A DNA stretch of 64,000 nucleotides from Haplodiscus bocki (GCA_965655095.1 OZ296649.1:806001-870000), one strand, 5' to 3'; shown: positions 1,291-53,582, counted from the stretch's first letter. Numbers and translations: made by a program. The notes: generated by a model not told the origin, from the letters alone.

Positions 1291-2519
1291 GTGTATAGGA
1301 GTATTGGGAGAGTTAGTTGGGTGGAGGGATGGTGGGCAGGGTTGGAAAACCCTCCATTTTTTTAAGATTGAGATAGATCTTCTAATCCCAAGTTGAGTCG
1401 TGAACCTAGGTTTTAAGATTGTGTCGCAGTATAACCGCGAAGCCTACGTACATTAAGAAAGAAAAGGACATTCCCAGATTGTCTGAAATTTTGAAGAAAC
1501 TTTATCAATACTTTAGACTTTTCTATTTCCATTCACATAACAATATTGCAGTAATTTCATTGCTTTTACATGTAGTGGATACGTATCAAACACATACCAC
1601 TCCCCAGTATATTTTCATACAAATTCTACGTATTTATACGTAGCACTCCGTAACCAGATTGGCACGTAACGAGCACGTGCCTACCTAGCAGCTTTTTGTT
1701 ACGTGCGCGGTACGTGGCCACCGATCTGGTGACGTCACTAAACTCTCAGCCAATCCGCTGTGCTTTTGCACTGTTTCACTTTGGTCGGCCACGTGCGTCT
1801 ACGTGCCCACCAGATTCATTCTCCTCAGTAGTACTGCGGAAGGCAGTGCTACAAGCGGCACGTAGCCGCCACGTGCCACCACGGCCAAAGTGTGCCGTAA
1901 GCTAGTAAAAACGTGGAACGGGCTAGGAAAACGCCTAGTTTCGTTCCGAAAGTGGATTAAATCGATGCAGTAGTATTATGAAGCATGTAATTATGATTTC
2001 CCCTGATTATTTTAGTGTATTTTATTTAATTTTGGTGCATTTTTCAATACTTTCCTCTTATGGGAAATCTTTTTGATTACTTGTTTATGTTATTATTTAT
2101 TTTATCGGCGCGGGAATAATCACTTTGATATCCATTTCCGACTGATCAGACACGTATATTTTCCGTCGAAAGATGGAAAAGACGCGGTTTGTAAAGGAAG
2201 AAATGGAGGGAAAGTTGTTTATTTCCCGCCAGAGTCGGCATATTTCCTTTGTAATTATTATGATCAAAGTACTTTTCCCTACTTTGTACCTTTACTTGGC
2301 GTGTAAACAATTATGTTTCCCGCCAAGGAAAACGTATAAATAGGAGAAACGAAAGTACTAAAGGGGGAGAACCTAAATATAACTTTGATTATCAGTTGAC
2401 TGTACTGATTGCAACTAGTTGTTTATTTTAAAGAATAACATTTTTGTTATAAACTCAACTTGACTAACAAATAAAAACTAATTCAGTCTTCATAACTGCG
2501 TGGCATTTTCTCTTCAAAA

Positions 2520-3103
2520 ATGGCAGCGTTGAGAAACAAACGAAAGTTGGCAGCCGTTACAAGAGAAACACAAGAACAAGTTTGTTCCACGTAGCGCGCA
2601 CGTAGACGCTCCCTACAAGTGTGTTCCACGTAGCGCGCACATAGACGCTCCCTACAAGTGTGTTCACGTAGTGCGCACGTAGACGCTTCCTACAAGTGTG
2701 TTCACGTAGCGCGCATGTAGACGCTCCCTAAAATTCAAAGAAACGCTGTACGTGGAGGAACATCCTAGGAACGGCCAGTCACGAAACACGTCCGTTCCTA
2801 GAATTAAGGAGGAATATATCACACAAGTTTCTGAGGAGATTGAAGGCAGAGTCACTAAAAAACTGTCCCAGGAGTTCAGCAGGACAAAGTCCCACATTTT
2901 GGGTGCTCTGTCCAAATTAGAAGAATTTCTCTTGAACCCACAGATAACGACGCATTCCAAAACCGTTCCGGGAACATTCCGGAACACAAACGTGGAAAAC
3001 CAGGGAACGAATGAGGACGACTCCCAGAGTGACCCTCATCCTGAAGCAGGCATCTTCCGCGGCCAGACTACACAAAACTCTGGCCCAAAAGATTGTCGTG
3101 ACA
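2520..3103 (+). pseudogene. ORF inside the LTR, probably the Gag N-terminus (MAALRNKRKLAAVTRETQE...EEHPRNGQSRNT...EEIEGRVTKKLSQEFSRTKSHILGALSKLEEFLLNP)
   Basis: ATG at 2520, interrupted by a minisatellite insert; ORF 2752-3108 is homologous to the minus-strand ORF 58483-58842; homology stops at the LTR-terminal CA in both copies. Confidence 0.55.
2583..2730 (+). repeat. 38-39-bp minisatellite, ~3.8 copies (TGTTCCACGTAGCGCGCACGTAGACGCTCCCTACAAGTG)
   Basis: Units start at 2583, 2622, 2661 and 2699; absent from the second LTR. Confidence 0.95.
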
Positions 3104-3599
3104 GATAGGCTGTAGTTCGGCAATGTTTTCAGATAAGGTATGGGTTCGTGTGTCGGCGAAAAGCGAAATAATGTTTTAAGACATGGGGTCAGACTCAATT
3201 TAATAGGAGAGGGGGCCCGAGCCAAAGAGTTAGGGTATGCAATGTGCTAACGTAGGTAATCAAATTTTGTCCGAATTAGGTAACGTTTTAAAATAGGGAG
3301 CCGATTCAATATTCAACGATGCTGTTTAAAAAAACTGTGGAAGTTTTTCGTGAAAAAAATTTTGAACTTGTTTTCAGGTGCACGTCGTTACTTCATGACG
3401 TAGGTGGAGGAGTAGTGACTTCGGCGGAATATTTTAGATGCCAGCAGTTAAATATTACGACTGCGGATAGTTCTGTGACTTGATGCTCTCTAAAACGTTT
3501 GCAAAAAAGTTCAAAGAAAACGATTAGAGAGTAAATATGGAAACAAAACCTTTAGTTTATGTTACTCACGAATACTGAAGCATTAAAATAAAATGAGTT

Positions 3600-4232
3600 T
3601 TTTAATTTTGACAGGAGGAGTGTGTATTGCATCTTGTTGAAGTTTTCTTTTGGGATAAACGCACAACAAATCCTAATTTGTCTGTTCGCATGTGACAAGA
3701 GTATGTGGTATTGGGCTAAAATCTCTTTTTATTGACGTTACAATAACATGCTTTTTCGAACTTTTGAGATACTTGGTCATCGGACCATCACCACAGTCAG
3801 CAAGCTTTTGTTTTTGTTCAATCATTTGCTGCGATTTCTGAATATTTCTGATTGGGTGTCATGGCAACATTATGTTTTTAGACAGACAAGGTATTTTTGT
3901 GCAGCGGAAACTTTCTTTGAGGAGGTTAGGTTCCCCCTTATTGTGTTTCCTATGCCTTGTGCAGAAAGTAGGAGGCAACAATTTTGTTGTTGAGTTGGCT
4001 TAAAAATCATTCGTACAGTCATCGCATCGCAAAAAAAATCCGTTCTTTATTGATTGCTGGTCGGATGCAACGATATAAGTATTAATCGGATAATGCTAAA
4101 TAGAGCGAGTCTCTGCCCATCTTCAGCTCTTTAAACTTTGCAACATCGGCAAGTTTGTCTAAAAAATTGTGAAAAAGCTCTAACATTCTGTAGTTTGCGC
4201 AATATGCGGTGCACAATCCCACAATTTTTATT
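3600..4232 (-). pseudogene. Maverick/Polinton protein-primed DNA polymerase B, C-terminal fragment (copy A)
   Basis: Frameshifted minus-strand translation: KFKELKMGRDSLYLALS (motif C, DTDS-like), LLKESFRCTKIPCLSKT, and terminal YPKRKLQQDAIHTPP; collinear with the end of copy B at 34090-34700. Confidence 0.8.
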
Positions 4233-4234
4233 TT

Positions 4235-6955
4235 CCTTCCAGAAAGTTGTCGTCGAGGGGAAATTATTCAATTCAGTAGTCGATATCGGACTTCTCTTCT
4301 TTGTACTGAAAATGCCTATGAGGAGCAGAATTTATTGCAGAGCCGTAAGTTCCTTGATTATTACAATTGAGGGGCGTCAACACGGTTAAGAAGCCAAAGA
4401 TAGCCTGTTCGGATCGCGTTATCCACCACATTGTTTACCTTTTTATAAGGTACTCGTTCAAGCATTCTCAGTTTTTAATGCAAAAAACAGTGTTTTTCCG
4501 ACAAATGTTAGGTTTTTTTCTAAGTGGGCTCATTTTTCTGGAATTTTGTACATTTTTCAAATTAAATGAATCAAATCAGCGGTTCTCAACATTTTTAAGG
4601 AAACTGGGAAAAAACATCTTGATTTTCCACAAAAGACAAAAAACTCGAAAGTCAATGAATCGGTCGAAAAATTCGACTAAAGTTGTAAACATTTGAACGT
4701 TCTTTTTCAGTTGCTAGGGATAAGTTCTTTCTCACCAGCCTATTTTCTCCAGGTTCAAACGATAATTCGTTATTTCGAAAAGATTTCCTCTAGAACATAT
4801 CGTTCTGTGATCCCCAGACTGAGAGAATGCCGAAAAGCGCAATTAAAATTGAATTTTCTCACTTTTAGTTAAAAATACAAAGCTGATTTTTCAAAATTAG
4901 GTCTCAATCGGAATCGTTCTACTTGTGGAAAAAAACTGTTTAGAAGAGTCGGTGGTTTTTTGTCATGAGTCACAACCCGCATAGTCCAAAACTCAAACGC
5001 GCAATCATTATTGATTTAATTCGTTCTTCAAACTGACTTTTCGGAGCAACCACATGTTTGATTTCAACAGTCAAAATCTCACTTAGAAGCTTTACTCCTT
5101 TGGAGGAGGATTCAAATGAGAAACCATTGCGATTAAACCATGCATCAAAAAATTGATAGTCCTAACTTTCCTGTAAATTGTTTTTGAAAACAATTCATCT
5201 CGATTAATGAAATGGTGTTTCTCCAAGACAACCGGTATGATCTACTTCATGAGAGTCACAATCAGTAACATTACTTTTGGAAAAAAACGATTCGATTCAA
5301 TTTTCAATCAACTGGTTTTTTCCATCAAAGTACGGTCAATCCCAAGAATCGAAAGATGTTTTTTTTAAATAAGTCGAATTTCAGACTTATAATTCTGAGT
5401 GACTACATGTTTAGTTTCTTCCAGCAAGTTCTGAATCGAAAACTTGAAACATGTTAAGTAGTGTTCAATTAGAAAAGAGTTCATGCTTAATCTTCTCTCA
5501 GAATTTTGATAGTCCGAATGTTCAATTTTTGCTAATGATTTTGATTCATGTCCATGTTCAATGTTAATTTTCTCTGTAACAGCAGGCGTTTTTTCCGTGA
5601 AGGTCTCAAACGAACTTTTTTCACTTGTGGCGGAGATTTAGATTGAAAACTTGGGTGCTCCTTGAAATAGAAATCTGATAATTTCAAAAAGTCCATAAAG
5701 CGCGAATAGTTTTGATTCAACAAGAGCTACAAACTGTTTTTTCTCTGTAGCTACCAGTGTAATTTCGTTCATGGAAATCTAAATTGGCAGACCTTCAGTT
5801 GCAGAGGTTATTTGACCCTTAAAAGCAATTTTTTTCTTGTTTCTTTTGGAAGTTGTTCAGATCAGGTATGCCAAACAACTGATAACTATTTTGACAGTTT
5901 TAAATCAGTTCCAACACTTTGTTCTTCATAATCACTGAGTCAAATTTTAGCTGCATGATTTCATTTTTTTGTTCTTTTGTAGCAAACGAGGTTTGATCAT
6001 TATTGAATTCGTTCCTTCCGTTGCAAACCTAATGGTTCGAGAATGCGAGAAAAGCTCCCAATATTGAAAGATATCTTCATTCAAACTCGTGTACCTCCAC
6101 AATTACACGCTTGAGTTATTCAACCAAAGCAGAAAAGTCTCTATTCTTGAAGGAAAACTTCGTTAAAACACTATCAACTGTGATCCTGCATTGAATTCGC
6201 GGAACTCAAATCGCCAGAAGTTCTTATATTCTGATAAATTGGACTCACCCTGATTTTCATACTCGTTTTTTGTCCAAAAACGCTGACTTAAAATCTTTGT
6301 TCATGGTCTCCATTCTTAGTTTTCTACTTGTGCCGGGGTATTTCATTAACAAGTCTTACTTTTGATCCATTCAGTGGAATTTTGAGTCATCAGAAATGAC
6401 ATGTGTTGCTGTCAGTCTTGGCATGACTCGATAATCTATCTCATTTTTGATCAATTCCGCCTCCCTCTTTTTTCTTTCAAAGTGTCAATCGATAACTTTT
6501 CTTTGGAACAGACTTTTCATTGCTAAAAATCATAAAATTTGATTTTTACATCGGACGTGGAGACCTGATTGACCAAAATTAACAAAATTTCTATTAGTGT
6601 TGCATTATCTTGACATTCCAACTCGACATTCTCAAGAACAACATTTTTCATTTCGTCTATCAAAGTCTGAAATGAAAGACATCTTTTTGATTATTTCTTA
6701 CGTTGAAAAACTTCTAACTATGTCACTTTATGTGGAGCGTTGACACGCTGAATACAAAAAGGTTCAACTCTTGTTCATAGTATGTCGATTCTCAAGCTGA
6801 TTAATCTCTGAAGCAATCAACCTAAGTTATCCTAGGGAGATCCCCATCGAAATGCTTCCGGTCAATTCTGGCTCCTTTATAAAAACGCTTTGTTGTTTGT
6901 TGAACCAAGTTTTTATCATCCACATTGACGGAACATTTCGCAGTGCGACTGGGCC
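4235..6955. other. ~2.7-kb unassigned degenerate insert splitting pPolB copy A
   Basis: The pPolB reading stops after ...EVEFVKSELGHKE (~6960) and resumes at ..IVG.. (~4228); in copy B these two segments are adjacent (EPIIAGF, ~34690-34720). Confidence 0.5.
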
Positions 6956-6957
6956 TC

Positions 6958-7955
6958 TTGTTCGTTCTTTGTGACCAAGTTCTGACTTCACAAATTCTAC
7001 TTCTTACAGTTTATCGCTTATGCGACCCACGTTCCTAAATTTTGTAATTGATTGATTAATCTGTTTTTTCATCACTGAGATACTTCATGACTGTATGTCG
7101 ACCCCGGTCCGTAACCTGGTAACTATAAAAACTGTTAACTAATAATTTTTGTCTCAGCCACAATACTAGAGATTGGACTTTTGTCGCTTGCCCTCGCTTC
7201 TAGCGTTCACTGCAGAGTCAGCAAAGTTGTTCAAACATTTCATTGGACTACACTGCTCAAACCGATAAAAGCTTCTTGCGAACAAACCCCAAATTCAAAT
7301 GAGAAACCAACAACGGTGTAATGATTGTTCTCTTTTCCAAGGAAGAGCTTGAAATTAGCTTTCTTCGTTTTTGAGTCAAATGTTGTTCCTGCTTGAGATA
7401 TTCTTTCATAAGCTGTCTATCATCGTCTCTGACAACATTAAAGTTTATGAATACTAAGGAACAATTGCAAAATTTACCCGGAATTTCTCTGGTACTTCAC
7501 TTTGGCATAGATCATAACGAAAGAGACTTCCACTTTTTATATTTTCCGGTTGTCTATCTTCACTGGGTGACATTACGTATGGGAGAGAGTCACGCAGATG
7601 CCTCTTAACAATACTATTTGTCTTGTCTTTTTTTCCACTAAACATATTTGCACAACTTCATGACGTTAAATACCTTTTTTCCTATAAAGTGATTTCCCAG
7701 TTAGTGAAACTCTCTCTTTTTACAGCTCCCTCTCAGTTTTTTTGTCAGCGAGGAAAAGATGATCTTCTTGAGAAGGAAAAATGGGAAATTAGCATCCCAT
7801 TGCTTAACACATTGTTTTGCAGGGTCCAGAAAAGCCTTCAAAACCATCAACATCATTTTTTTTGGGTAAGCTTTTCGTGTAGACACTTTCCACTTTACAA
7901 TGAGGTCTGACTCTTTGAAAGTATGACATGACCATTTTCCATCCATTCATCTCGA
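6958..7955 (-). pseudogene. pPolB copy A, middle fragment (nuclease-like insert domain through motif B)
   Basis: Reads MVMSYFQRVRP, KRHLRDSLPY..NIKSGSLFRY, then after frameshifts IVAET/KLLVNSFYSYQVTDRGRHT (motif B, K-x3-NS-x-YG-like). Confidence 0.8.
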
Positions 7956-7959
7956 AAGT

Positions 7960-8928
7960 TTGCAAGATCACTCCCGCCAATTTAATTCAAAAACAGATTG
8001 AATGTTCTAGAAGTCTCTCTTCTTTAGTCTCTCATTTCTAAGCAAATGCAAAGGCAGAGCTCTAAAGAGACATAAATTATAAGTTTATGGTTTTTGGGCA
8101 TTCTTCCTGAAATTTAGGCATTTGGAAGGATGACTGTTTACTTGGAGATCTGGTAGTACAGCGCTTTTGCAACCCATGGGAGCTTCTTTGAATAATACTG
8201 CATGAAACAGAAGACTGGTTAGCTTGTAGATCTTCTACTATGTATTTGCTTGTTCTCTTGAGCGCGGTTCAATGGCATCGGTGTTACTCAGTAGACTATT
8301 GTTTTCTATTAAAGCCCTGAGTGTACATCGTTTCAACGGTGTAATATTTTTTTGTGCATGATATAACTGGAAACTCCTCTTTTCTACGTTTGCAGGAACA
8401 ACCTCGAATCTTACATTCATCTAATCTGCACCTCTGAGGTTTTCTCAAACAGTATTTAGCTTTGCAACAAAAGTTTCGGGCCTAGAGTGTCCATAGCCGA
8501 GGTAATGTCTCTGTGTCGCCCATTCTTTTTCTCCTGTTCCAACAAGAAGTGCCTGGAACTTTGTAGTTCCCCTCTTCAGCTATTGCCATTAGTGGTTTCC
8601 ATTAGTGGTGTGACATTGACATTTTGTGCTCCCGATACTATCTGTGCTCAATGTTCCTTCCGCTTAAGTTTTTGCAATGAGTAAAAGCTGTGACAGCCTC
8701 AACCGCAACCGTTGCATAAAAAAAACAAACTCTAGCAGTTGTTGCAGAGTGGTTTTTGATAATGTAAAACTTCGTCTCGGCTCGGGAATTTGTTGAAACA
8801 TTGGCACCAGGAGGATATGTGATAGTTGCAGCAAAAAATCTTGTTTTGTGATTTCCAAGAATTTGGCGTGTAGTTTGGGTACCACAATTCTGACAAAACA
8901 CCTTTTCGTTGCGATTGAAGGAAGGCAT
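7960..8928 (-). pseudogene. pPolB N-terminal region with Cys/His zinc-finger-like start
   Basis: ORF 8638-8928 MPSFNRNEKVFCQNCGTQTT..., then FQLYHAQKN and LCLFRALPLHL; the start is homologous to 36800-36960, at the 5' end of the copy B polymerase. Confidence 0.65.
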
Positions 8929-8999
8929 TTTAGTACCAACAAACGTTCAAATTGAAGCAACTTGACTGTAATTATGTAAAAAAATTGTTGGTTAAAAGT

Positions 9000-11600
9000 A
9001 TGTAGCAGGCGTTGCTCATCAAGTCACGCCTTATTTGGGAAGAGCATGATAGGGGAAACTAGTCCCAAAACCAAAAAATAATCTTTCAAGCAACGTTTGA
9101 ATTCAAAAATCAAAAGATCCTGTTGGTAATTTTAACACGAACTACGTCAGGTTTTTCTCGATCAGTCGTTAGAGCCATTTCTTGGTTTGCTTTTCTTCGT
9201 CCACAAATATTTTCGTTGAATCAAGGATTTACTCCTTTTACCTACTATGATACATGGAAAGACAAAAACGTTGAAGCGACCCGGTTGGTACCCCAAAATT
9301 GAAACACAACTGAGAATATGAAACAAACAACGTGGGATTGTTCTGTATGAATCGAAAGAGCCCCCATTTTTGTCTTCATTTTCTGCCTGACGAAATCAAT
9401 GAAATTGAATCTGAAACAAGATATGCTCCATCTGACAAAATCAATCAACTGGAACATTAATCTTGGGTTACGGTGACAGATTGTCTATGATGATCACGCA
9501 AGTGGACCAATTTGCTTTGATAAGCGGAAAGGTTGTCTGGGAAACTTTTTTGGTTATCATTTTTATTTGGTTTCAACTGTCAGTAAAAAAAACTCTCAGA
9601 ATGAAAACAAAAAGTGACGTTTGCACAAAATTGGGCCCTGTAGGTGTTAGAAGATTCCGATTCATGGAATTGTCGCTATGGGGTATAAGTTCTTCTGATG
9701 ACCTGGTGAACATTTTCAAATACAAAACCACAGTCTCACAATTTACTCTAAAAAGTGAGATGTTCAAAAGTGACTGGTCAAAAAAACTCTGTAATTGGTG
9801 AGAAATGAAGTCTTTGACGAACCGCATCGCCTTTACCGCTACGCCGCTGATAGAAACGTTATAGCCGAGTTAAAACAGTTGATGTCTGTCAAAAGGTAAA
9901 TTCCCCGTTTTTGCAGTATGTAATCCTTCTTTAAAGAAAAACCATAAAACTTTTTAGACGTTGCAGACGTGGGTAATTATTTTTACCACAACATGTTTGA
10001 CTTTTCCCAGTCCCAGAATCGAGTTGCACGAGTTAGCAAAGTCTCTAGAAAAAGTCTTTTGCGAGAAATAAATTTCTTTTTTCCGATTTGAAGAAAAAGC
10101 AACGTTATATTCTCGAAGAGGATGTGAAAATTTCCAAGATAGAACTGGGTTCTTTGGTCAACAGTTTGTGCGGTTTTCTCAGAAGTTTTGATGAAGCGAG
10201 CAAGTGTTTACACATTCCATTACCGTTAGCCTAAAATTAAGATCGTATCATCGACGTCAAATGGCACTCTCTTCAATTTTTACTCTAAAGGCGTCATTGA
10301 ACATACAAATAGACAAAATCATTCATCGTTTCGATTAGGAAACAACAAATCTTGCATCTTCCAGATCAAAAATTCCAACTTTACAAAACTCAGTTCTTAC
10401 TTCTAGAAAATACTGACCTTAACCACTTCGAAATTTGCCATGTCCACAGGAACCGATATCAAGTTTGAAATATTTGAGAGCAATTGCGATGTGTAGCACA
10501 ATCAGCCCGGTTTGTAGGTAAAATAAAAGCGATAATAGCAATTTTTATATAGTCCGGAAAAAGGTGTTTTGAGAAACTTTGTGAGCACGAAAAGACATTT
10601 CAATCATTCGAGAGAACTGATTATCAAAGTCCTCAATGCACGTCATTATGTCAGGTTCGCAAATAGTTTTTCAAAGAATAAACAAATTTGTTTTTCCTGC
10701 GGTGTAACCAGGGGTTTACATCTTTGGAGAGGTGGGAAAATGAAAACAAGAGGTCACTGCAGGTGTCTTTTGTCCTGGCAGAAATTGGTGCAGAAAAAAT
10801 CCTTAACGGTCAAGTAACTACTCTCATTTGTGTTTGTGGAAATTGTGGATCCTAGTCGCTTGTTCACAAAAGTGCTTTGACTTTACAAGAAAACGTAAAA
10901 ATGACAAAAACGAAAACACGTTTTTTAACCAAAAAGTTGAAATTAATACCTGGAAAGCAAAAGTTTACCATTGTATCACTGTATCACAAAAAACCGTTAA
11001 AAATGTGTGTGGACATCATAGTACAAGAGATTATTGGAGATTTGTGTTGTGCTATATGGTAAAGCGAAAAATGTACTTACCTTTCAACCGCAAGTACTTC
11101 TAATTTCTACGACTGTAAAAAATGCGAAGCCTGCGGTCAGGTGTCTAATGTTCCATTCAAGGAACAAAAGCTGATACTGACTTTTTTGGTGGAGATGGTA
11201 CCCATGGCTTTGCAAAAAAGATGAGTGGTGTCTATGAAGCAGCATAATCGTGAGTTTTGCTACAATAGTGTGTGTGCCGATTATATTCAGCCACCTCTGA
11301 ACCTGCATTAAAGAAGGCCAAAATTGTTCGATTTGTGGCATAATCGTGTCGACTTTTCATTGACTGATAAATGCAAACGAACTTTCATTACCAACTCAAA
11401 ACAATTTCAAGCTAGAAAAAACTACTATGACTTTCTCAATCTCTAACAACAGAAACCAACATCCTCTTGGTTTTGGAGCAGATTCTGTGACATTGAACGT
11501 GCAAGATTTTGTCCAAATCATGACAATCAACTCACATGAAAAGACCCATGCTGCGTGGCAATTGCATTTTTAGCAGATACAAGAATTTTTAGAGAGCCTC
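9000..11600. mobile_element. Maverick small-ORF cluster upstream of pPolB (copy A), degenerate
   Basis: Collinear nucleotide homology to 37000-39530, e.g. ggttctttggtcaacagtttg at ~10148 and ~38035. Confidence 0.7.
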
Positions 11601-11689
11601 TTAGCTAGGGATCCAATAATCCCAATCAGCAAGAGACTATGGATATGCGGGTTGAATTACTTTCAAGTGTAGGCGCACAGAAAACAAAA

Positions 11690-12810
11690 TGGAGTAGTAG
11701 AAGAGTGAGCTCCATTTTTGTGTTCAGAGCCACAGTCATCGCTCGAAAATTAGAGTAAGGATAAAGCTGACTAGCATCAATTTCAACACTTGTTTCGCAC
11801 AAGTTGGTTGAATCACGAAAATGTGTCTCCTTCATAATAGCTTTTGTTGAGAATACAATGGATGGTCCTCCAATCACGTCCCGTGTACTTGCTCAAAGGA
11901 ATCCTTGTCGCCCGCTGGGAAGGGATAAAACTTTGCAGAAGTTGACTTGTAAAGACAAAAAATTGCAAGAACTGGCAAAATGCATCGAAATTTTTAATTG
12001 TTGAGTCCTTCAAAGCGGTGAAAATCAACAATTTTTTGCGTAACTTCTAACGCTGGAACAATCCTCAAGATAATATGCCAGCGGAGAAAGTCTTCGAACG
12101 TACACATTTCTTCTTGATCACACACCTTACCTTGAGCAGGTGTTGAAAAATTCCTTGTCCAGTTGAAGGTGAATGATTCAATTTAAATTTCGATGATTCT
12201 TCTTTAGATGTCGTACCGCCATTTTTCAAGCCTTCAAAGTCTGAATCATCATTTAGAAGGGGATTATTGTCGCGCAGTTTGCCAAGGATGGCATCATAAG
12301 GAGGAAAATGGAAGAAGCGCGATTTTTGCTTTATCGAACCTTTCATATGGAAAAACACTTTCCGCCTTTGACGTCTTGTAGGCTTTCAGGAAAAATTCAG
12401 CAATCTTGGCTGCTCGGAGGAAGTTCAATTTATAATTAAACTCAACGTCTTCAAAGTTGAAACATACAAATTGATTAGCCTTCTGGTAACTTTTGGTTCA
12501 ATCTCTCGTACATTAACATGGAGAAGCAGCAAAAAACACTTCATTGTGATATTGTCCTGTTTTGCGATGTTAAAGCCAAACACTGGAAGAACATCGCGAA
12601 ATCTTTCCCAGACATTCTGCAAGTCAAGAGTTTGTTTCTTTTGTGTCTGTGAAAATTGCGTCACTGCATCTTGCTCTTCTTTTTCTATACACTTTTTTCA
12701 AATTCTGAAAAGGTTCGTTGCAACCAAAATAAAGATTGCGATCGGAGAAGATTTTGATTATGTTTACTCTTTGGACTTGTTTCAAGCTGAAAAAACTTAT
12801 TTTTCATGAC
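11690..12810 (-). pseudogene. pPolB copy A, exonuclease to motif A fragment
   Basis: ORFs give DVLPVFGFNIAKQD (ExoII-like FNxxxYD), FPPYDAILGKLRDNNPL, and GGPSIVF...IDASQLYPYS (motif A DxxSLYP). Confidence 0.9.
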
Positions 12811-12824
12811 GAGAGTCAGCTGAG

Positions 12825-13228
12825 GTGACGGAGGTTCAAAGAACCTAATGTATTAGGATAAGCTATAGCGATTCAACTGGAGCCGATAGCTGAGAAAGAC
12901 TTTTGGCCCTAGCTGACAATTTTTGGGTGGTGTCACACTCGATTCTGATTGCTTGACGAAAAATTTACAATTTTCGTGGTCCATTCTGATTAGCCGCTGA
13001 CGTTTTTTGACGACGATAAAGTGTTAAGATAGCGTATACCTCGACATTGTAAGAAACGCGATATAGTTCGGGAGCTCATTAAGTGAGGTTGCGCTCGACT
13101 CTTTTTTGAAAAAGGCAAACGTTCAACAACGTTTTGAGACAGGGTATAGTTGTTCAAAGTGCAAAGACAAGGTGTAGTGACGCAATGTCTTAAAATGGGG
13201 TCTGGTTCGACAATGTATTAACACAGGG
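12825..13228 (+). repeat. Conserved head of satellite sub-array A
   Basis: Close paralog at 23830-24209; contains ACTCGATTCTGATTG (12937-12951), also present at 23919, 46098 (one mismatch) and 50241. Confidence 0.85.
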
Positions 13229-36960: not shown

Positions 36961-36999
36961 TTTAGTACTTACACATGTAAAGATTGAAGTAACTTGACG

Positions 37000-40200: not shown

Positions 40201-40309
40201 GGGATATTGTAGGCTGTCAATATTCATGGTGATATTGTTGAGAGCGTTTTGAAAAGTACTTGTGGCGGAGATAGGTAAACATTAAACCTTAGCAGAGGTT
40301 ACAAACTTT

Positions 40310-40670
40310 AAATCAAAATCAGACACATTGTAGAAAAATCAATTCCAAAACTGACACTTTGTAGAAAACTTTTATTCAAAATGTGACTTTGTAGCAAAAC
40401 ATCAGTTCAAAAACTGAAATTCCCTGAGAAACATGTGCTTCAGAATCAAGTTTGTTGAACGACATGAAAATGAAAAACTTGTTGTTTTTACGGATTACAT
40501 TGAGTCAAAAACATGATTTTTAAGAAGTAAGTTTTACACTCGAATTCTGATTTCCAAAGGATACTTCTTCTTTAAAATCTGATCAAAAAATAATTCGAAT
40601 TCTCACAGGTCAAAAAACAATCAAAATCTGACGATTTGTAAAAATTTTGATCCTAAATCTGTGTTTCAAA
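40310..40670 (+). repeat. Degenerate ~30-bp tandem repeat (ATTCAAAATCTGACACGTTGTAAAA-like)
   Basis: Recurrent caaaatc(a/t)gac units; unrelated to the 28-bp satellite; reverse-oriented array at 47750-48012. Confidence 0.7.
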
Positions 40671-43100: not shown

Positions 43101-43222
43101 ATTAGACGAGATTATTTAAATCAATCTCTTGTAAGCTTGGTCAAGTGACTGGACTATTCTTTTGCCTTTACGTAAAACCCTTTCTGCCGACCACTTTCAA
43201 TTTTGTCGAAATTTGAAGCAGT

Positions 43223-43680
43223 ATGTTTTTCATTGTACCAGATATTGATTTTGCAGATACGAAAGTTTTCAAGAAGTTGAGATTTTCCAAGAATGGGAAT
43301 GTTCAGGGATGCTCATCTTGTCCTTCGAACAAATACAAACCCATGAACACAAGCATTTTTGGGGTCAAAAAATATGTGCGGAAGTTTCTGGAAAAGTGGA
43401 AGTTTGGATGACAGTTAGTTTCCAAACATTTCGCCGAGAGATGTAGAGAAAGAACGTTTTCAAGAGAAATTTTAAAACAGCAGGATTCTTAGAAAAATAA
43501 TCGCCAAAAACTTTGGAAACTTGGATGATCAAGGCTGCCCCAAATTTCGAGATCTTGTTGATTCTGAAGCAGAAGAAGAAATTTGGGTTTGCTCGAGTTG
43601 CCTTTCAGAAACAAGACCACAATTCACTGTGCAGAGTGCAAGGCAAATTTGCCTGAAAACTAGACAAGGCAGCCTCTAAA
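43223..43680 (+). pseudogene. DEDD/DnaQ-like exonuclease-fold gene relic of a Maverick
   Basis: FIVPDIDFADTKVFKKL (hhhDxE...KEL-like), later NLDDQGCPK and a Cys/His tail WVCSSCL..K.TIHCA. Confidence 0.5.
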
Positions 43681-44052
43681 GTTGTAAAAATTGTATTGTG
43701 GAGTGTATTGTCATAATCTGCGTAATTAGGTCTTGTAAAAAGATTCAATCATTTTTTTAGAAAATCGTTTTTGAGTGATTGAGCGAACAAACTAGATGAC
43801 TGATGCAGATAGCAATAATAATCTGGGCAAGATTGATTTCGACGGCAACAATCAAGAGCAAAAATTGTGGTCCTCTACAGGATGAACCTGTTCCAGATCC
43901 CTGATAGTCTTTTTCTCCCCACTTTTTGTCAATCTGTTGTTTGTCTCTGCTTGCCTCTGAAGAATTCATCTTTCAAAAAAATGTGACCAAACAATTGTCT
44001 GGGTGAGCAACTTTTTTAGTGTAGCAAGATGAGCTGAACTCTCACCAAAACT

Positions 44053-44760
44053 ATGAAAAAAATTGTTGCTTCAAAAAAGAGCGTTTTTGTACTTTTGGTT
44101 CATCCCTCTGACACAAGAAAGTCACGTAATTTTTTTACATTGAGTCAAAGTTAGAACCTCTCAACAAAGAATTGGTGAAAACGCTTTTCTATCAACACTC
44201 CTAGCCACTTTACGATGCTTTGCAAAGAGAGAGTTAAAATCTTGAGCGTGCATAGGATGTAAACTTCGAATTTATATATTGGTTGAAAAACAGCGGTACA
44301 AAGTACTTGTTATTCTTCAATAAACTATCTTAGGATCTTTGCAATCCGAAAGCCTTTTTGATATTGCAACCGCTGATTGGCATAGTGGTTTTGAGTACTA
44401 TTTACTTTAAGCCCAACTTGTTTCTTCAAAGCAAACTTGGGCGAGAGTTCGAGCTCTCAAATACGTATATTTTTCTCTCAAAACTCACTTTGAGGTGATG
44501 CAAATCAGTGCGCCTAGCGCACAAATGGGTCCCGGATCAGGGCTTCTTCACCGGTATTGAGACGCAACATCCGTTCTCTACGGTCATTTATTGATAGAAA
44601 AGTTGCTATGAACAGAAGATCGATTTAGTTACTGTAAAAAAAACACTCGATCCGTTGCTCAAAGTTTATATCCCCGACAAGTTGAAACAAATTAAGTCTT
44701 TGGGCGATGAACAAACAAAACATCAATTTTCTCCAAGTGATCCCATCAGTTTTTGTCCAC
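44053..44760 (+). pseudogene. A32-like (FtsK/HerA) packaging ATPase of a Maverick, degenerate
   Basis: MKKIVASKKSVFVLLVHPSDTRKS (decayed Walker A GPSxTGKS), TKYLLFFN (Walker B hhhhDD), DIATADWHSG (A32 GRH motif), YGHLLI. Confidence 0.8.
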
Positions 44761-44989
44761 TCAAAAAGTTTTTTTTTCCTTCAGCCTTGCCGAACATAGT
44801 TTAACAGGTAAATCTGCAATTGCTTAGTAACTCTTCTAAAAAAACACCTGTAAAGCGTAAAAAGAAGTCACTTGAGATAGTTGCAGAAACATAGTTGATT
44901 TTTATTTTAAAAAACAATCACTTGGCAGCAATTAGAGGTTGTGGAATCTAAGGAAAGGTGACTGCTGAGGCAAATCTTGACTTATAACA

Positions 44990-46018
44990 GTGTTGAGCTG
45001 TTCCCAGTCTTAATACACTGCTGATTAATACCTTGTTTCATTAGATTGCTGAGATGTTCCCAATCTTGAAAAAACGCTGACCTATACCCTTTATTGTTAC
45101 TTTGCTGTGCTTTTCCCAATCCTAAAACTTTGCTGATGTATACAATCTCTCATTACATTGCTGAGAAATTCCTAATCTTAAAACATTGCTGATGCATACC
45201 TTGTCTTATTATATTGCTGAGACGTTCCCGATCGTGGAAAAAAGCTGACTTATACCCTTTCTTCTTTTATTGCTGTGCTTTTCCCAATCTTAAAACTTTG
45301 CTGATGTATACACTGTCCCATTACATTGCTGGGAAATTCGCAATCTTGAAACATTGCTGATGCATATCCTGTCTTATTATATTGCTGAGATGTTCCCAAC
45401 CTTGAAACAATGCTGACGTATACCTTGAGATTTTACATTGCTGAACTGTTTCTAATCTTATAACATCCCTGAGGCTTATCTTGTTTTGTTACATTGCTGA
45501 GACGTTCCCGATCGTGGAAAAAAGCTGACTTATACCCTTTCTTCTTTTATTGCTGTGCTTTTCCCAATCTTAAAACTTTGCTGATGTATACACTGTCCCA
45601 TTACATTGCTGGGAAATTCGCAATCTTGAAACATTGCTGATGCATATCCTGTCTTATTATATTGCTGAGATGTTCCCAACCTTGAAACAATGCTGACGTA
45701 TACCTTGAGATTTTACATTGCTGAACTGTTTCTAATCTTATAACATCCCTGAGGCTTATCTTGTCTTGTTACATTGCTGAGCTGTTCCACTTCTTTTAAC
45801 ATTGCTGAGGCATATCTTATTTTACTACACTGCTGAGGAGTTCCCAATCTTGAAGATTGCTCACGTATACATTGTGATATTACATGGCAGAGCTATACCC
45901 TATATTAGCACATTGACGGACTATGGTTTATGTTAATACATTGCTGACGGTTTCCACGAAACTATGTCGGCAGCACATCAGAATCATTTATTTTGTCACC
46001 CAAAATGCCCGAGAGCTG
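44990..46018 (-). repeat. Satellite element, minus strand: CAGCAATG-variant 28-bp array (56-bp dimer, 280-bp duplication) plus head
   Basis: acattgctga recurs at ~28-bp spacing; gacgttcccgatcgtgg at 45221 and 45501; the head 45910-46018 is the reverse complement of 46069-46177. Confidence 0.9.
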
Positions 46019-46068
46019 CCGACTTGGTATAACCTAATATAGAACATAGGAACCTACACCTTATCCTT

Positions 46069-47215
46069 CAGCTCTGGGGTCTTTTAGGTGATGTAATACT
46101 CGATTATGATTGGCTGCCGACAACGTTTCGTGAAAACCGACAGCAAGACATTAAGATAAACCATAGTTCGACAATGTACTGAGATGGGTTAAAGCTCAGC
46201 AATGCAATAGCACAAAGTATACGTCAGCAATGTTTTGATATTGGATATAGCTCAGCAGTGTAATGAGATAAGATACGCCCGAGGAAAGTTATAAGATTAG
46301 AAAGAGCTCAGTGATGTAAAATAACAAAGTATACGTCAGCAATGTTTCGAGTTTGGGAATAGCACAGCAACGTAACCAGAAAGGGTATACGTCAGCATTG
46401 TTTCAAGATTGGGAAAATCTCAGCATTATTATGGGACTGAGTATACATCAGCAATGTTTAAAGTTTGGGATTTTCTCAGCAATGCAATGAGACAGGGAAT
46501 ACATCAGCAAAGTTTTAGGATTGGGAATAGCACAGCAATGTAACAAGAAAGGCTATGCATCAGCATTGTTTCAAGTTTGGGGACATATCAGCAATGCAAT
46601 AAGTCAAGGTATACACCAGCAGTGTTTTAGGACTGGCAGTAGCACAGCAATGTCAAAAGTCAAGTTTTGCCGCAGGAAATATTTGAGATTGGGAACAACT
46701 CAACAATATAATAAGAAAGAGTAAGCATCAGCAATGTTTTGAGAGCGGCAAATCTCAGCAATGTAATAGCATGGATTCACCTCAACATTGTTATAAGATT
46801 AGGAGCATCCCTACAATGCAATAAGACCGGGTCTAACTCAACAATGTGTTATATTTGGGTATGGCTCATCAATGCAATAAAATTGGGAATTACTCAGCTA
46901 CGTAAAATGATTGGTGTTACTTAGGCAATGTGTTAATGTTGGGTATAGCTCAACAGAGTGTTAGGGCAGCGTATACATCAGCAAAGAAATAAGAAAGCGT
47001 ACACTCCCCACCAATGTCCTTAGACAGGGTATTTTTCCGCAAAAAAAATGTGTTGTATGGATTTGGGTTCCCGAGTCTTTGACCCTGGATAAGTTTAGGC
47101 TTTCGGCAAAAACCGAGTGCATAGAGTCCTTAAGACCGTCACAGTTTTATGATATGCAATCCGAGCTAATTTTGTTCGATAATGTATTATGATAGTGTGT
47201 ACAGGCAGACCTTGC
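46069..47215 (+). mobile_element. Satellite element, plus strand: head + CAGCAATG-variant array + tail
   Basis: Head motif at 46098, array ~46150-47030, tail (gcgtacactccccaccaat...atttgggt...aatgtattatgatag) homologous to 50720-50945. Confidence 0.85.
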
Positions 47216-49400: not shown

Positions 49401-50234
49401 GCGTTATTGAGAACGGTTCTTAAAGAATGAATTTTTAGAGTAGCAAGTTGCTGATTTTATAAGATTTTAACCGGTTCATACATGCTTTATAATGATAACT
49501 TTTCCTTTTTGGTCGAAGCTACAATGACTCCCATATATGGGAGATGTTTCCTTTTTTTGGGACTTGGTGCAAATTTTAACACTAATTTGTTTCTCAGTAA
49601 TTTGTTCAGCGTAATTTTTCCAGACAACCTGTTGTCTTATCAGGGCAGTTTGTTCCTCTTAATTTGTTCCTCTTTTCTCAGACACGCTGTCTGGTGATAT
49701 ATGTCCCCGTGATAAATTTTTCCCAGACAGCCTGTCACCATAAAAGGGGAACTTGTTCCACTTGAGTTGTTTTCACAGAAAAGCATTTTTATCCAAATAA
49801 CTAGTTTTTAAAAGTATAAAGTTGATTTTTAGGACAAAAGAAATTAATTGACAGCTCCTCTTATGGTTAGTCTGTCCTTTTTTTGCACATTCCATATCTG
49901 GTACAAAGTAATGATTATCACTCGCTACATATTTTCGCCGGAAGCGGGTTCCATTCACAGGTCATGTCCAGTTTATTTGAATAAAAAAACGATGTAGTCA
50001 CTCCACGGTTTTGTCACTGTATGTTGGTCGTTCCTCGCTTCCAACCACTTCCGGAACCATCTTTTTTTCACACTTGATACGCGTGAATGAGCTCGTCGAA
50101 ACTTTTGCATGATGGCCTAGAGGATTTCCTTTTATGTCAATGGTTTTAACTTTGTGCTCATATAAGTACATGTAGGTCTTAGGCTGTCTGCTCGTGATTT
50201 ATTCAGATTTGATTTTGATTGCGTTATCGCGTGA

Positions 50235-50948
50235 CTAAATACTCGATTCTGATTGCTGTCGACAACTTTTCGGGTAAGTTGACAGCAGTGTTTTAACATC
50301 GGCCATAGTTCGACAATGTACCAAGATAGGGTATGGCCCAGTAAAGTATTAATGTTTGGTATACCTCAGCAATGTGTTAGGATTGGGCATAACTCAGCAA
50401 TAATTTAGTATTTGGGCGTTGCTTAGCAATGTAATGAAACAGGGTGTACCTCATCAATGTGTTAGGATTGGGCATAACTCAACAATGCATTAGTCTTTGG
50501 GAAATGGTTAGCATTGTAATAAGATAAAGTACACCTGTACAATGTGTTAGGATTGGGCATAGCTCAGCAATGTATTAGTTTTTGGCAATTGCTTAGTAAT
50601 GTAATAAGATAGGGTATACCTCAACAATGCGCTCGGATTGGGCATAGCTCAGCAATGTAAAAATGTTGGGTTGAGCTCAACAGTAGAATAAAACAGGCTG
50701 TAGTTCAGCAAAGTAAAAAGATAGCGTACACTACCCACCAATTTATTGAGACAGGTTATACTTCGGTAATGCATTATTATATGGTTTGAATTTGGGTGTC
50801 CTAGTCAATGAATTGAGAATTAAAAAGGGTTGCGTTTTTGGCACAAACCAGAAACTGAGTGTATGAGTCCGTCAGTGTTTTAGGAGTTGCGATCCGAACC
50901 GATTTTGTCCCACAATGTAATATGATAGCGTCTAGAGCCAGTCGCCTC
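50235..50948 (+). mobile_element. Satellite element: head + 85-bp trimer array + tail
   Basis: Head motif at 50241; aatg(t/c)g..ggattgggcata at 50371, 50456, 50541 and 50626; tail homologous to 46995-47210 and ending in GTCGCCT. Confidence 0.85.
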
Positions 50949-51149
50949 AACTTTAACTTTCACCTACCTTCCTCCATAAGATGTAGGCATCATTTAGCAT
51001 TCAAATTAAGAGAAGCAGTTAGACACAAGAGATAATCGTTTACCTATGAGCATAATGCTACCAATTTTGAAAAATGGTTGATATGATTCCATGTTTTTTG
51101 ATTTTCAAAAAAAGACTCCTGTCTCAAACATTTTACATGCTTGCTTGTC

Positions 51150-51950
51150 CTCAAACTCCATGATTTGAGTAGACAGACCCAAAGGAATCCTGAAAACACA
51201 GCTTGTTTATCAAATTTTACAAATTTGTTGTGGTATCTTACAGTAATGCAGACTCCGTTGCTGAAAATTCAAACCCCTTTTTGTTTTTTGAGTGACACTT
51301 CGACGCAAAAGTACTGCTTAATGGTTATTTTGTAACGCAAAACTATGTTTTTGTAGTTTTTCAATCAGAAGGAACTAAAAACAATTACCTTGACAACTTC
51401 ATCAGACATGTTAAAGAGACAATAAGTATAAAAATCCTTAAGCAATTTAAAAAAAAATTTAAACTACGAGGCATATATGTCTGGCTTTCTGATTGAGATC
51501 TCTAACATTCACACAATCACTTTTGGTTAACAAAGACATTTTTTGTCTCACAAATCACCTGCAGGTTACATTTGGGATGAAATGTCTTTGATTGTTTACT
51601 GAAATTATGAGGACCAGGATCGACAATGATAAACATCGGAACAAGAGTTGCGACGGTGACCATTGTTTTTTCTACTTCAGGAAATGCGGCTTCGATTGAA
51701 AGTAAAATGTTGCAGTACACAACAATATTTATAAAACTCCATCAATGTACATTGAGCGAATCAAAAACCCAAGTTTTCATTTTGTCAAACGTCCTTGCTG
51801 GTCTCTCAATACATTGCGTGGATCAGAAACAGCACTCAAACCCGTACTTTTTAACAAAATCTGTAATTATTGGTTTTGTTGACATAGCAAATGAGTACAT
51901 GCCGGCGTACAATATAGGCGCAGGCTTGCAAAATCATCTTTTTTAGAGTT
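51150..51950 (-). pseudogene. Probable PIF/Harbinger (DDE_Tnp_4) transposase relic
   Basis: AFPEV..VATLVPMFIIVDPG...CNLQVICETKNVF resembles GFPxVxGxIDxTHxxI...SxNxQxxCD; downstream PQQICKI..SCVF resembles the ACxxLHN region. Confidence 0.5.
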
Positions 51951-52273
51951 TGCATCAATGTAAATGTGCAGATTACAAGTTTTTCTTGTTAGCATTTGTT
52001 CTATCTAACTAAATTTTTTGAATTAAAATCAATCTTTTAACATAGCATTAGGTCGAAACAGTTTCAACAAGGGTAACAGAAAGTGATTGACAACTCTTGC
52101 GGTTTTTCTGTTTTTTTGTGGTTATTCTTTCCTTTTATGGTCTTTCCATAAAATGTTTTTTGTGAGAGACAACACAGGATACAGATTTTTCGCCATTTTT
52201 CTTTTTGTCGTTGCCTCATTCGAGTTGCTACAATCTTTTCGTTTGTTGCGATTTTCCTGTAAAATTACTGTTC

Positions 52274-53035
52274 CACAGGCGTCAGAGAGCTATCTTCTAT
52301 CCTACTACAGTGCGGAACTAAACCCTATGTTATTACAATTTCGAACTATACCCTAGCTTAATACATTACGGAACTTTACCCCATCTTAATAGAATACCGA
52401 ACTATACACGATCCTAATACATTACCGAACTAAACCCCATCTTAATACATTTTCGGAGTACATCCTATTTTATTTCATTACCGAACTATACACTATCTCA
52501 ATACAATACAGGACTATACCCTACCTTATTACTTTGCCGAACTCTACAATACCTTCATACATTAGCGATCCATACCCTATCTTAAAAGACTGAGCAGAAC
52601 TTTACGCCTTCTTAAAACATTACCGAAACATACCCTATCTTTATACATTATCGAACTAAACCCTATATTGATACATTACCGAGCTCTAGCGAATATTAAT
52701 ACATTACCGATCTATACCTATGTCAATACATTACCGAACTAAACCATATCTTATTACATTTTCGAACTACACCCTATCTTATTACATTACCGAACTATAC
52801 CATATCATAGTACAATAGGGAACTATATCCTACCTTATTAAATTGCCGAACTCTACCCTATCTTCATACATTAGCGAACTATACCCTATCTTAATACATT
52901 ACCGAACTAAACCATATCTTTATACGTTACCGAACTACACCATATCTTATTACATTACAAAATTATACCCTATCTTTAAACATTGTCGAATCATACCTTA
53001 GTTTAGTACATTGCCGAAGTATCCTTCCACATTGC
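52274..53035 (-). mobile_element. Satellite element, minus strand, with CACAGGCGT terminus and 28-bp array (plus-strand unit TACATTACCGAACTATACCCTATCTTAA)
   Basis: CACAGGCGT at 52274 leads directly into ~25 monomers. Confidence 0.85.
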
Positions 53036-53053
53036 ATAAGTCAAAACAGTATC

Positions 53054-53582
53054 CACAGGCGTAAAAATTAACCGCAGGCATCTTAATTAGTCCTCCCAGT
53101 AATATTTATGCGCGCGGCCTCTGGAAAAAAATCAATAAAACTTCTCGAAGAAGTCACGCGGTGCCGAAAATTGTCGCACAGTGCCGAAAATATCATATCC
53201 CGTACCTTAATACCTTGCGAGACCATTCAATAGCCTTATACATTACCATAAACACCATCCTAATACATTGCCGTCTTATCATAATACATTGAAGAACCTA
53301 TACCCTATTTTATTACATCTCCGAAACTATACCCTATCTCAATACATTATTACCCTATCCCATATCTTAATACATTGCCGAAACTATGCACTATCTTGAT
53401 ACATTGACGAAACTATACCCTATCTCAATACATTGCCGAAACTATACCCTATCTTAATACATTGCCGAAACTATATCCTATCTTAATACATGGCCATGAC
53501 CCTTTGACCCTTCTCGGCCCTGGGCACGAGTCGGCTGCTATAGCCTATCTTAATACATGGAGGGTATACCGCCCCCCGTCTG
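53054..53582 (-). mobile_element. Compact, apparently complete satellite element (~530 bp) with 29-bp monomers
   Basis: Starts CACAGGCGT, ends CCGCCCCCCGTCTG; ATC on both flanks (53051-53053, 53583-53585); monomers ACATTGCCGAAACTATACCCTATCTTAAT; right end homologous to the heads at 1338 and 12827. Confidence 0.7.

What the first reader, a model, noticed from the sequence alone, without database searches (positions are those of the whole stretch)
1335..53582. A satellite-seeding mobile element: conserved head + 28-bp array + conserved tail, from a few to hundreds of monomers
Seen: at least eight 28-bp arrays in both orientations (1335-3325, 12825-23830, 23830-33527, 44990-46018, 46069-47215, 50235-50948, 52274-53035, 53054-53582). 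They attach to shared non-repetitive ends, always in the same polarity relative to the monomer. The head has GACGG...ACCCTCCATGTATTAAGATAGGCTATAGC-like sequence and/or ACTCGATTCTGATTG; the tail ends ...CGCCTGTG (CACAGGCGT at 52274 and 53054). Known: CAC termini and subterminal repeats typify CMC/Transib-type DNA transposons, and TE-internal repeats can found satellites. Inference: one non-autonomous family whose internal array expands from a ~0.5-kb element to ~10-kb satellites, with the whole size series visible in one window.
Basis: partly seen in the sequence, partly recalled or inferred. Interest (0 to 1): 0.85.

Follow-up and report, generated by a model that had tools for sequence, protein, structure and literature searches.

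The report
Maverick transposon ends carrying expandable repeats
The scattered 28-base repeat arrays are not a small new transposon: they sit inside the roughly 1-kb inverted end repeats of giant virus-like Maverick/Polinton transposons, and in one dead copy the array has grown from a few dozen units to about 20 kb.

Summary
The 28-bp arrays are real at seven of the eight places given; 1335-3325 is not an array. The shared head and its fixed polarity are real. The proposed CGCCTGTG/CAC terminus is not: homology runs through it.

Well-preserved relatives fetched from public assemblies (L008, L009) show what the unit is. Head + array + tail occurs as an inverted pair at the two ends of a ~19-kb element. 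That element has ends 5'-AGTAGTAG...CTACTACT-3' and perfect 6-bp target duplications. It carries a protein-primed DNA polymerase B, an A32-like ATPase and an rve-like integrase.

The window holds decayed copies:
- G+F are one TIR.
- A+B are one TIR with an internal duplication and near-identical 2.6-kb and 2.5-kb higher-order repeats.
- 34.3-45.0 kb is the collinear, broken gene interior.

Array size runs from 1-23 units in the relatives to about 730 in A+B. A transposon repeat seeding a satellite-like array is therefore supported, but it is a known principle in a new carrier.

Earlier notes of this scan on this window described the two modules, the higher-order repeat and the palindrome. None that I saw named a Maverick.

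The parts
1285..3547 (+). Copy H: decayed TIR. Probable head is at about 1285-1400, foreign repeat insert at about 1400-3100, 2-3 monomers at 3103-3303, and the inner tail with the conserved block at 3419-3547.
   Evidence: nhmmer with the L006 tail hits 3419-3547 (E 7e-5); block alignment; sequence read. The head is seen by eye only and falls below the nhmmer threshold.
3604..12485 (-). Decayed, rearranged Maverick interior next to H. Remnant of the 272-aa ORF is at 3604-4255, polymerase B pieces at 7457-7938 and 11707-12485, and the zinc-finger ORF remnant at 8019-8722.
   Evidence: tblastn of L008 gene products against the window.
12806..13012 (+). Outer end and head of the left TIR (A): diverged AGT-type terminus, stem-loop region, and two copies of the CTCGATTCTGATTGG-like motif.
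   Evidence: nhmmer 12811-12959 (E 3e-15); alignments.
13012..23828 (+). Array A, about 386 monomers. It includes a 2586-bp higher-order repeat, about 3.3 copies at 99.8-100% identity (about 13.3-21.8 kb).
23829..23994 (+). Internal duplicate of the head island (B). It starts at 'monomer 0', so it lacks the outer 40 nt of the head, and is 85.7% identical to 12847-13230.
   Evidence: self-BLAST; nhmmer model positions 56-160 only.
23994..33527 (+). Array B, about 340 monomers. It includes a 2495-bp higher-order repeat, just over 2 copies at about 100% identity (about 26.9-32 kb).
33527..34057 (+). Inner part (tail) of the left TIR: tail start, A-rich module, second conserved block, inner end.
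   Evidence: nhmmer 33743-34056 (E 1e-19) and 33531-33605; pairwise homology between copies ends at 34056-34065.
34259..44969 (-). Maverick interior, collinear with L008 18871->6491. Broken remnants: the 272-aa ORF (34272-34882), protein-primed polymerase B (35190-36177), the zinc-finger ORF (36366-36860), several small ORFs, and the A32-like ATPase (44187-44969, + strand). The integrase-side 4.3 kb of L008 has no counterpart here.
   Evidence: blastn 67-72% identity; tblastn 37-57% identity; no Pfam hit in window ORFs of 75 aa or more.
44998..46079 (-). Copy C: TIR head (lacking about 15 nt of the terminus) plus about 35 monomers of the CTCAG variant, with a 280-bp higher-order repeat. No tail; the array abuts the ATPase remnant.
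46074..47208 (+). Copy D: 5'-cut head (from about model position 114), about 32 monomers, spacer, first conserved block and one monomer. It meets C head to head.
50231..50950 (+). Copy E: the same cut head and the same stop as D, with about 15 monomers.
   Evidence: D/E tail alignment 46978-47208 against 50705-50941; other genomic copies stop at 50950-50960 (records 1, 9, 25).
51986..53604 (-). Right TIR (G+F as one unit). Outer end ...CTACTACT is at 53604, head at 53506-53604, array 1 at 53277-53495 (29-bp units), spacer plus conserved block 1 at 53022-53172, array 2 at 52297-53022 (26 units), then A-rich module and block 2 at 51987-52313.
   Evidence: nhmmer; collinear with the L007/L008 left TIR; summed contig depth falls from about 150,000 to about 170 just outside the end.

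Best explanation
The head + 28-bp array + tail unit is the long terminal inverted repeat (about 1.0-1.6 kb without expansion) of a family of Maverick/Polinton virus-like DNA transposons.

A preserved copy reads, from the outside inwards:
- terminus 5'-AGTAGTAGA;
- a G run;
- a 13-bp stem whose ~50-nt loop holds the first monomer;
- one or two CCAAT-like CTCGATTCTGATTGG motifs;
- array 1;
- a ~170-200-bp spacer ending in a 45-bp block;
- in some TIRs, array 2, an A-rich module copied from the element's interior and a second block;
- then the genes.

Integration by the element's rve-type integrase makes 6-bp target duplications (shown in L008 and L009). The number of 28-bp units changes by slippage or unequal exchange (inferred).

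In the window all copies are dead. In the left TIR of the large copy the array first grew to several kb: its monomers are now about 25% from consensus, so that growth is old. The island-plus-array module was then duplicated. Recently, 2.6-kb and 2.5-kb blocks were amplified at about 100% identity, giving about 20 kb.
For: Two outside copies show the inverted pair at both ends (L008 1159-20017, L009 972-20112). Their ends read AGTAGTAG...CTACTACT, with target duplications AGTCGC/AGTCGC and GTCTTA/GTCTTA. A third near end is seen in L010.

Genes: DNA_pol_B_2 at E 6e-8, above Pfam's cut-off; Pox_A32 at E 3e-4. An rve-like ORF in L012 (E 3e-5) has 47% identical homologues at L008 5234-5839 and L009 5233-5846. 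About 2,458 related polymerase fragments were found in public assemblies.

The (AGT)2//(ACT)2 end motif, 6-bp duplications and TIRs of up to 1,447 bp are the published marks of vertebrate Mavericks (PMC8097293).

Window: interior 34259-44969 is collinear with L008 at DNA and protein level. The TIR parts were mapped by nhmmer. H and B are each followed by the same 272-aa ORF remnant.

The stem-loop is 81% paired, with 8 of 13 pairs changed on both sides; 0 of 500 shuffles reach this. The monomer consensus is identical in the window and the outside copies.
Against: No window copy keeps a 6-bp target duplication (TTTTTC against GCAGAG at the big copy), and its left terminus is diverged.

Which TIRs pair in the window is unsettled: A/B with GF, or A/B with C and D or E with GF.

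The integrase hit is below Pfam's cut-off. No capsid or protease was identified. The ORFs called in L008/L009 are short for Maverick genes.

D and E share cut ends that a Maverick integrase could not use, so some copies may spread another way.

The outside copies come from unnamed assemblies, and the window's organism is not verified.
Confidence: 0.85

Rival explanations
1. One reading: a small non-autonomous cut-and-paste element (CMC/Transib-like, CAC...GTG ends) whose own internal array expands.
For: Head, array and tail recur with fixed polarity. CACAGGCG stands at two array edges.
Against: No inverted repeats bound a unit. Homology runs through the CGCCTGTG motif in six copies. The true outer end is AGTAGTAG with 6-bp duplications at the ends of a 19-kb element.
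Confidence: 0.03
2. A Helitron/Helentron-type non-autonomous element (HINE-like) with central tandem repeats. This kind is known to scatter satellite-like arrays, and Helitron-like trains are reported elsewhere in this genome by earlier notes.
For: It has left flank + central repeats + right flank with fixed polarity, as in Cg_HINE (PMC7492417). Single units show no target duplication and no TIR. There is a hairpin in the left flank.
Against: No 5'/3' subterminal inverted repeats and no 3' palindrome. No Helitron Rep or helicase in the window. The unit is found as an inverted pair with 6-bp duplications around polymerase B, ATPase and integrase genes.
Confidence: 0.04
3. Besides the Maverick TIRs there is a secondary family (D/E type). 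It would be a 5'-cut, 3'-cut TIR fragment with its own monomer variant that multiplies as part of some other repeat (capture or segmental copying). This would be the closest thing to the reader's small 'satellite-seeding element'. It can hold alongside the main explanation.
For: D and E share both cut points, a CTCAG monomer variant and 56-bp dimers, yet have unrelated flanks. E's flanks are themselves high-copy. One genomic copy runs through E's 3' stop into the flank, while others stop at 50950-50960.
Against: Only two copies were seen. No ends or duplications are defined. D abuts C, so its 5' cut may be local. Contig data give no true copy numbers.
Confidence: 0.25

Closest known systems
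Maverick/Polinton self-synthesizing virus-like transposons (Kapitonov and Jurka 2006; Pritham et al. 2007, both from my own knowledge; vertebrate survey PMC8097293)
   Same: Size about 19 kb, long TIRs, (AGT)n/(ACT)n end motif, 6-bp target duplications, protein-primed polymerase B, A32-like packaging ATPase, rve-like integrase.
   Different: The TIRs carry a conserved 28-bp tandem array (1 to 23 units in preserved copies, about 730 in one dead copy), a covarying stem-loop and CCAAT-like motifs. The element also encodes two C2H2 zinc-finger ORFs. I found no paper describing tandem arrays in Maverick TIRs. A locust satellite matching a Polinton coding region is on record (PMC4935994).
Foldback-type transposons whose TIR-internal repeats became satellites (Tetris of Drosophila virilis, PMC4079207; Drosophila FB and Galileo, from my own knowledge)
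   Same: Tandem repeats inside long TIRs, variable in number, that expand into satellite arrays outside or beyond the element.
   Different: A different superfamily with different ends. Here the carrier is a virus-like element with its own polymerase.
HINE/DINE-1 Helentron derivatives and tandem-repeat-bearing MITEs (Cg_HINE PMC7492417; DTC84 PMC3879986)
   Same: Short satellite-like arrays between conserved flanks, fixed polarity, dispersed through the genome, seeds of satellites.
   Different: The defining subTIRs, 3' palindrome and TT target are not found. The unit here is an end of a larger TIR element.
Tandem repeat blocks in the inverted terminal repeats of linear dsDNA viruses (poxviruses, asfarviruses; from my own knowledge)
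   Same: Variable-number short tandem repeats lying a short way inside the inverted terminal repeat of a protein- or hairpin-ended linear DNA genome.
   Different: No sequence relation was tested. The function of such repeats is not established here.

Membership tests
Maverick/Polinton | [quoted passage not shown] | tested here: met
   L008:16560-17939 hits PF03175 at E 6e-8, 32.4 bits against a cut-off of 25.8. The window remnant at 35190-36177 is 39% identical at E 3e-42, in several frames.
Maverick/Polinton | Retroviral-type (rve) integrase | tested here: inconclusive
   L012:1135-1767 hits rve at E 3e-5 but 24.6 bits, under the cut-off of 32.6. Homologues lie at L008 5234-5839 and L009 5233-5846 (47% identity). 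There is none in the window.
Maverick/Polinton | Long terminal inverted repeats | tested here: met
   L008 TIRs are 91% identical over the first 442 bp. L009 TIRs are 82% identical over about 1,040 bp. nhmmer finds head and tail in inverted orientation at both ends.
Maverick/Polinton | 6-bp target site duplication | tested here: met
   AGTCGC/AGTCGC in L008 and GTCTTA/GTCTTA in L009. Not preserved at the window copy.
Maverick/Polinton | 5'-AG...CT-3' ends, (AGT)2//(ACT)2 motif | tested here: met
   AGTAGTAG...CTACTACT is seen in L008, L009, L010 and at window 53604. The motif is as listed in PMC8097293.
Maverick/Polinton | FtsK/A32-type packaging ATPase, capsid proteins, adenain-like protease | tested here: inconclusive
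   Pox_A32 hits at E 3e-4 (L008) and 2e-4 (L011), just under the cut-off. No Pfam or PDB-sequence hit for capsid or protease among the other ORFs. No structure prediction was run.
HINE (non-autonomous Helentron) | 5' and 3' subterminal inverted repeats with a 3' palindrome; TT target; no duplication | tested here: not met
   No head-to-tail inverted repeat of 9 nt or more in L006, L007 or window E. No conserved 3' structure. 6-bp duplications flank the pair.
   The CACAGGCG motif is internal to a conserved block. No TIRs were found around units.
SINE or other small-RNA-derived retroposon | tRNA/5S/7SL-like head | tested here: not met
   No tRNA. No Rfam hit in the window at gathering scores, and none up to E = 1 on the L007 unit.

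The most novel reading that the evidence does not exclude
The 28-bp units are not passive. Their consensus is identical in decayed window copies and in younger copies from other assemblies, while the unique TIR parts differ by about 30%. They lie just inside the replication and integration end, next to a covarying stem-loop. They could be iterated binding sites (iteron-like) for an element protein, for instance one of the two C2H2 zinc-finger ORFs this lineage carries, acting in replication, packaging or silencing. A 5'-cut TIR with a very homogeneous array also sits beside a gene of a 25% GC giant-virus-like genome in two independent assemblies. This leaves open a virophage-like link between this Maverick lineage and a large DNA virus of the same animal host.
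Probability: 0.12. Interest if true: 0.8.

Novelty: new variant of a known kind. Interest (0 to 1): 0.45.

Why it matters
It replaces a supposed new transposon class with a clear reading. A large family of Mavericks in this animal-like genome (earlier notes: probably a stony coral; not verified here) has end repeats that contain a conserved minisatellite.

The copies seen here show a full series, from one unit to a 20-kb array with higher-order repeats. That adds Maverick TIRs to the short list of transposon parts that seed satellite DNA.

It also matters for annotation. Such TIR arrays break assemblies and hide Mavericks from repeat finders, and solitary arrays can be mistaken for small elements. 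The conserved unit, the stem-loop and the element's own zinc-finger ORFs give a concrete binding test.

Tried and rejected
1. TIRs around single units: none.

2. Helitron/HINE reading, prompted by earlier notes on this genome. No subTIRs, no 3' hairpin and no Rep or helicase domains in 98 window ORFs of 75 aa or more.

3. tRNA or Rfam-derived head: none.

4. Copy number and exact ends from reads. Only Logan contigs were on offer, so depth is a sum over look-alikes. They were useful only for the sharp outer boundary near 53.6 kb and for stops at 50950-60.

5. More copies by DNA pattern. There was 1 hit in JGI metagenomes (L001). There were none in three scans of viral contigs (two monomer patterns, one head motif) and none in prokaryotic genomes scanned with a monomer pattern.

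6. Orthology of L006/L007 with the window. I rejected it because both are paralogous copies within one assembly (87% alike) and the outer flanks do not match.

7. A tail block I thought I saw left of C at about 44.8 kb is really ATPase-coding remnant.

8. A 4-bp duplication reading was replaced by 6 bp once the first base was assigned to the flank.

9. Earlier-findings look-up by sequence gave a blank.
Full report
**The observation.** TRF, lag-28 autocorrelation and a position matrix built from the large array all find a diverged 28-bp repeat.
- On the + strand it lies at about 13.0-23.8, 24.0-33.5, 46.1-47.0 and 50.3-50.8 kb.
- On the - strand it lies at 45.0-46.0, 52.3-53.0 and 53.3-53.5 kb. 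The last array has 29-bp units.
- Hits number about 750 above the 99.99th percentile of shuffled sequence.
- The stretch 1335-3325 is not an array. It has two or three monomer-like units near 3.1-3.3 kb and an unrelated repeat between.
- The head motif ACTCGATTCTGATTG stands before the arrays at 12937, 23919 and 50241, with a one-mismatch copy at 46099. It always lies on the same side of the monomer.
- CGCCTGTG occurs only at 52274 and 53054.

**Why the small-element reading fails.**
- Local alignments showed that similarity between copies runs straight through the supposed CGCCTGTG terminus. A 45-bp block containing it is shared by 53064-53021, 3455-3490, 52076-52032 and 33965-34008, with homology on both sides.
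- No inverted repeats bound any unit.
- No tRNA or Rfam family matches.
- 98 window ORFs of 75 aa or more have no significant Pfam domain.
- Logan contigs laid at 80% likeness show that all of 50050-53645 is repeated in the genome, with a sharp fall just outside 53.6 kb. Contigs give no true copy number.

**Copies from elsewhere.**
- One exact-pattern scan of JGI metagenomes gave L001: head, about 11 very uniform monomers and the start of the B-type tail.
- An antisense ORF across its tail and array led to two long host-like contigs of one ENA assembly.
- These hold clean copies (L006, L007). All share a sharp outer end (...AGTAGTAGA), a G run, a stem-loop, the CCAAT-like motif once or twice, and array 1. 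A spacer follows, ending in the 45-bp block.
- In L007 there follow array 2, an A-rich module and a second block.
- L007 is collinear with the window's G + F + 290 bp, so G and F are one unit.
- nhmmer with these natural sequences maps every part in the window.

**The turn.**
- The DNA downstream of the L006 unit is collinear with the window downstream of B for 8 kb. L007 matches 39.9-44.9 kb.
- Extending both loci (L008, L009) showed two ~19-kb copies, 87% alike. Each has the unit at the left end and its inverse at the right end.
- The ends read AGTAGTAG...CTACTACT and are flanked by perfect 6-bp duplications, AGTCGC in one copy and GTCTTA in the other.
- Inside lie a protein-primed DNA polymerase B (PF03175, above cut-off), an A32-like ATPase (just under cut-off) and two C2H2 zinc-finger ORFs.
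- There is also a homologue of an rve-like ORF seen in L012.
- The (AGT)2//(ACT)2 end motif, 6-bp duplications and TIRs up to 1.4 kb are the published marks of Mavericks (PMC8097293).
- The polymerase has about 2,458 relatives in the protein collection. The 120 listed are all from unnamed ENA assemblies.
- The unit is therefore a Maverick/Polinton TIR.

**Reading the window with this key.**
- Left TIR, about 12806-34057: head A, array A, an internal duplicate of the head island that begins at the first monomer (B; 85.7% identical to A over 385 bp), array B and the tail.
- Interior, 34259-44969: collinear with L008 at 67-72% DNA and 37-57% protein identity. It holds broken remnants of the 272-aa ORF, polymerase, zinc-finger ORF and ATPase. 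The integrase-side 4.3 kb of L008 is absent.
- Right of it lie C (-), D (+), E (+) and the two-array TIR G+F (-, 53604->51986).
- G+F shares the A/B monomer type and about 30 bp of inner flank with L008's left TIR. C, D and E share a CTCAG variant.
- Pairing is therefore open: A/B with G+F and later insertions between them, or A/B with C and a gutted second copy ending in G+F.
- H (1285-3547) is a further decayed TIR. It is followed, like B, by the 272-aa remnant and by scrambled polymerase pieces up to 12.5 kb.
- No window copy keeps its target duplication.

**The arrays.**
- The consensus unit is the same in A, B and the outside copies.
- Mean identity to the consensus is 0.75 in A/B, 0.82 in F/G and 0.71-0.72 in C/D/E. 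It is 0.89-0.96 in the outside copies, so the window copies are old.
- Units per TIR: 1 in L012, 3 in L011, 8 in L010, 9+4 and 16 in L008, and 21-23 in L009.
- In the window: 2-3 in H, 8+26 in G+F, about 15 in E, about 32-35 in D and C, and about 730 in A+B.
- In A+B much of the bulk is recent. A 2586-bp block occurs about 3.3 times and a 2495-bp block just over twice, both at 99.8-100% identity. Such identity could also be an assembly effect, which I could not check.

**A conserved stem-loop.** Thirteen base pairs, about 38-113 nt from the end, enclose the first monomer. Across eight TIRs 81% of cells pair and 8 of 13 pairs show changes on both sides. No shuffle of 500 reaches this, and slid controls fall away. 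RNAalifold on its own chose other small hairpins, so this is a named, tested structure and not a blind prediction.

**Comparison with the known.**
- A transposon repeat seeding a satellite is well documented. Examples are Helentron HINEs (PMC7492417), repeat-bearing MITEs (PMC3879986) and the foldback element Tetris (PMC4079207).
- HINE membership fails on subTIRs and the 3' palindrome.
- I found no paper on tandem arrays within Maverick TIRs. A locust satellite matching a Polinton coding region exists (PMC4935994).
- This is therefore a new variant of a known kind.

**Limits.**
- The organism is not verified.
- Outside copies come from unnamed assemblies.
- Capsid and protease genes were not identified.
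- The census that would settle pairing and the D/E question needs the whole genome.
- In keeping with the rules for provirus-like elements of animals, I only compared natural copies. I built no consensus and mended no frame, and I do not say which copy is best preserved.

Noticed in passing
L001 1-480 and L002 667-887, with L003, L004 and L005 for comparison: A 5'-cut TIR (no AGTAGTAG end, AT-enriched head, very uniform array) lies beside a 144-aa ORF in 25% GC DNA in two independent assemblies. Relatives of that ORF lack it (L003, L004). A 44% identical relative sits among double-jelly-roll capsid, A32 ATPase and pox-type RNA polymerase subunit genes on a 180-kb contig. There the AT-rich block abuts 38% GC DNA at host-like coverage, so the virus-like DNA is probably endogenous.
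   Followed up: partly
window 12788-12799 and 53620-53631: The exact 12-mer TGAAAAAACTTA stands in direct orientation just outside both outer ends of the big copy. It is not the expected 6-bp duplication and I cannot explain it.
   Followed up: partly
window 46074-46079: C and D meet head to head with both termini cut. This could be two neighbouring copies after a deletion, or an end-to-end junction of the kind linear TIR genomes form.
   Followed up: partly
L011 (contig ctg14944c, 16,140 bp): A contig whose name suggests a circle holds polymerase B, an A32-like ATPase and two 3-unit arrays in the same orientation, 13.3 kb apart. It may be an episomal or tandem form, or an assembly collapse.
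   Followed up: no
window 8936-9094, 36974-37124, 49837-49937; L008 14510-14722: The A-rich module of the two-array TIR is also present once in the element's interior, so part of the TIR was copied from inside the element.
   Followed up: partly
window 51042-51957: A different high-copy repeat lies between E and the right TIR. Summed contig depths are 20,000-100,000, with common break points at 51331, 51386 and 51862-51877.
   Followed up: no
window 2104-3092 and 58613-59417: An unrelated repeat family (73-76% alike, inverted) includes a 38-bp x4 tandem repeat at 2576-2730. It is the insert that splits copy H.
   Followed up: no
L008 14814-16466; window 36366-36860 and 8019-8722: This Maverick lineage carries two C2H2 zinc-finger ORFs next to the polymerase. 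To my knowledge these are not among the usual Maverick genes.
   Followed up: partly
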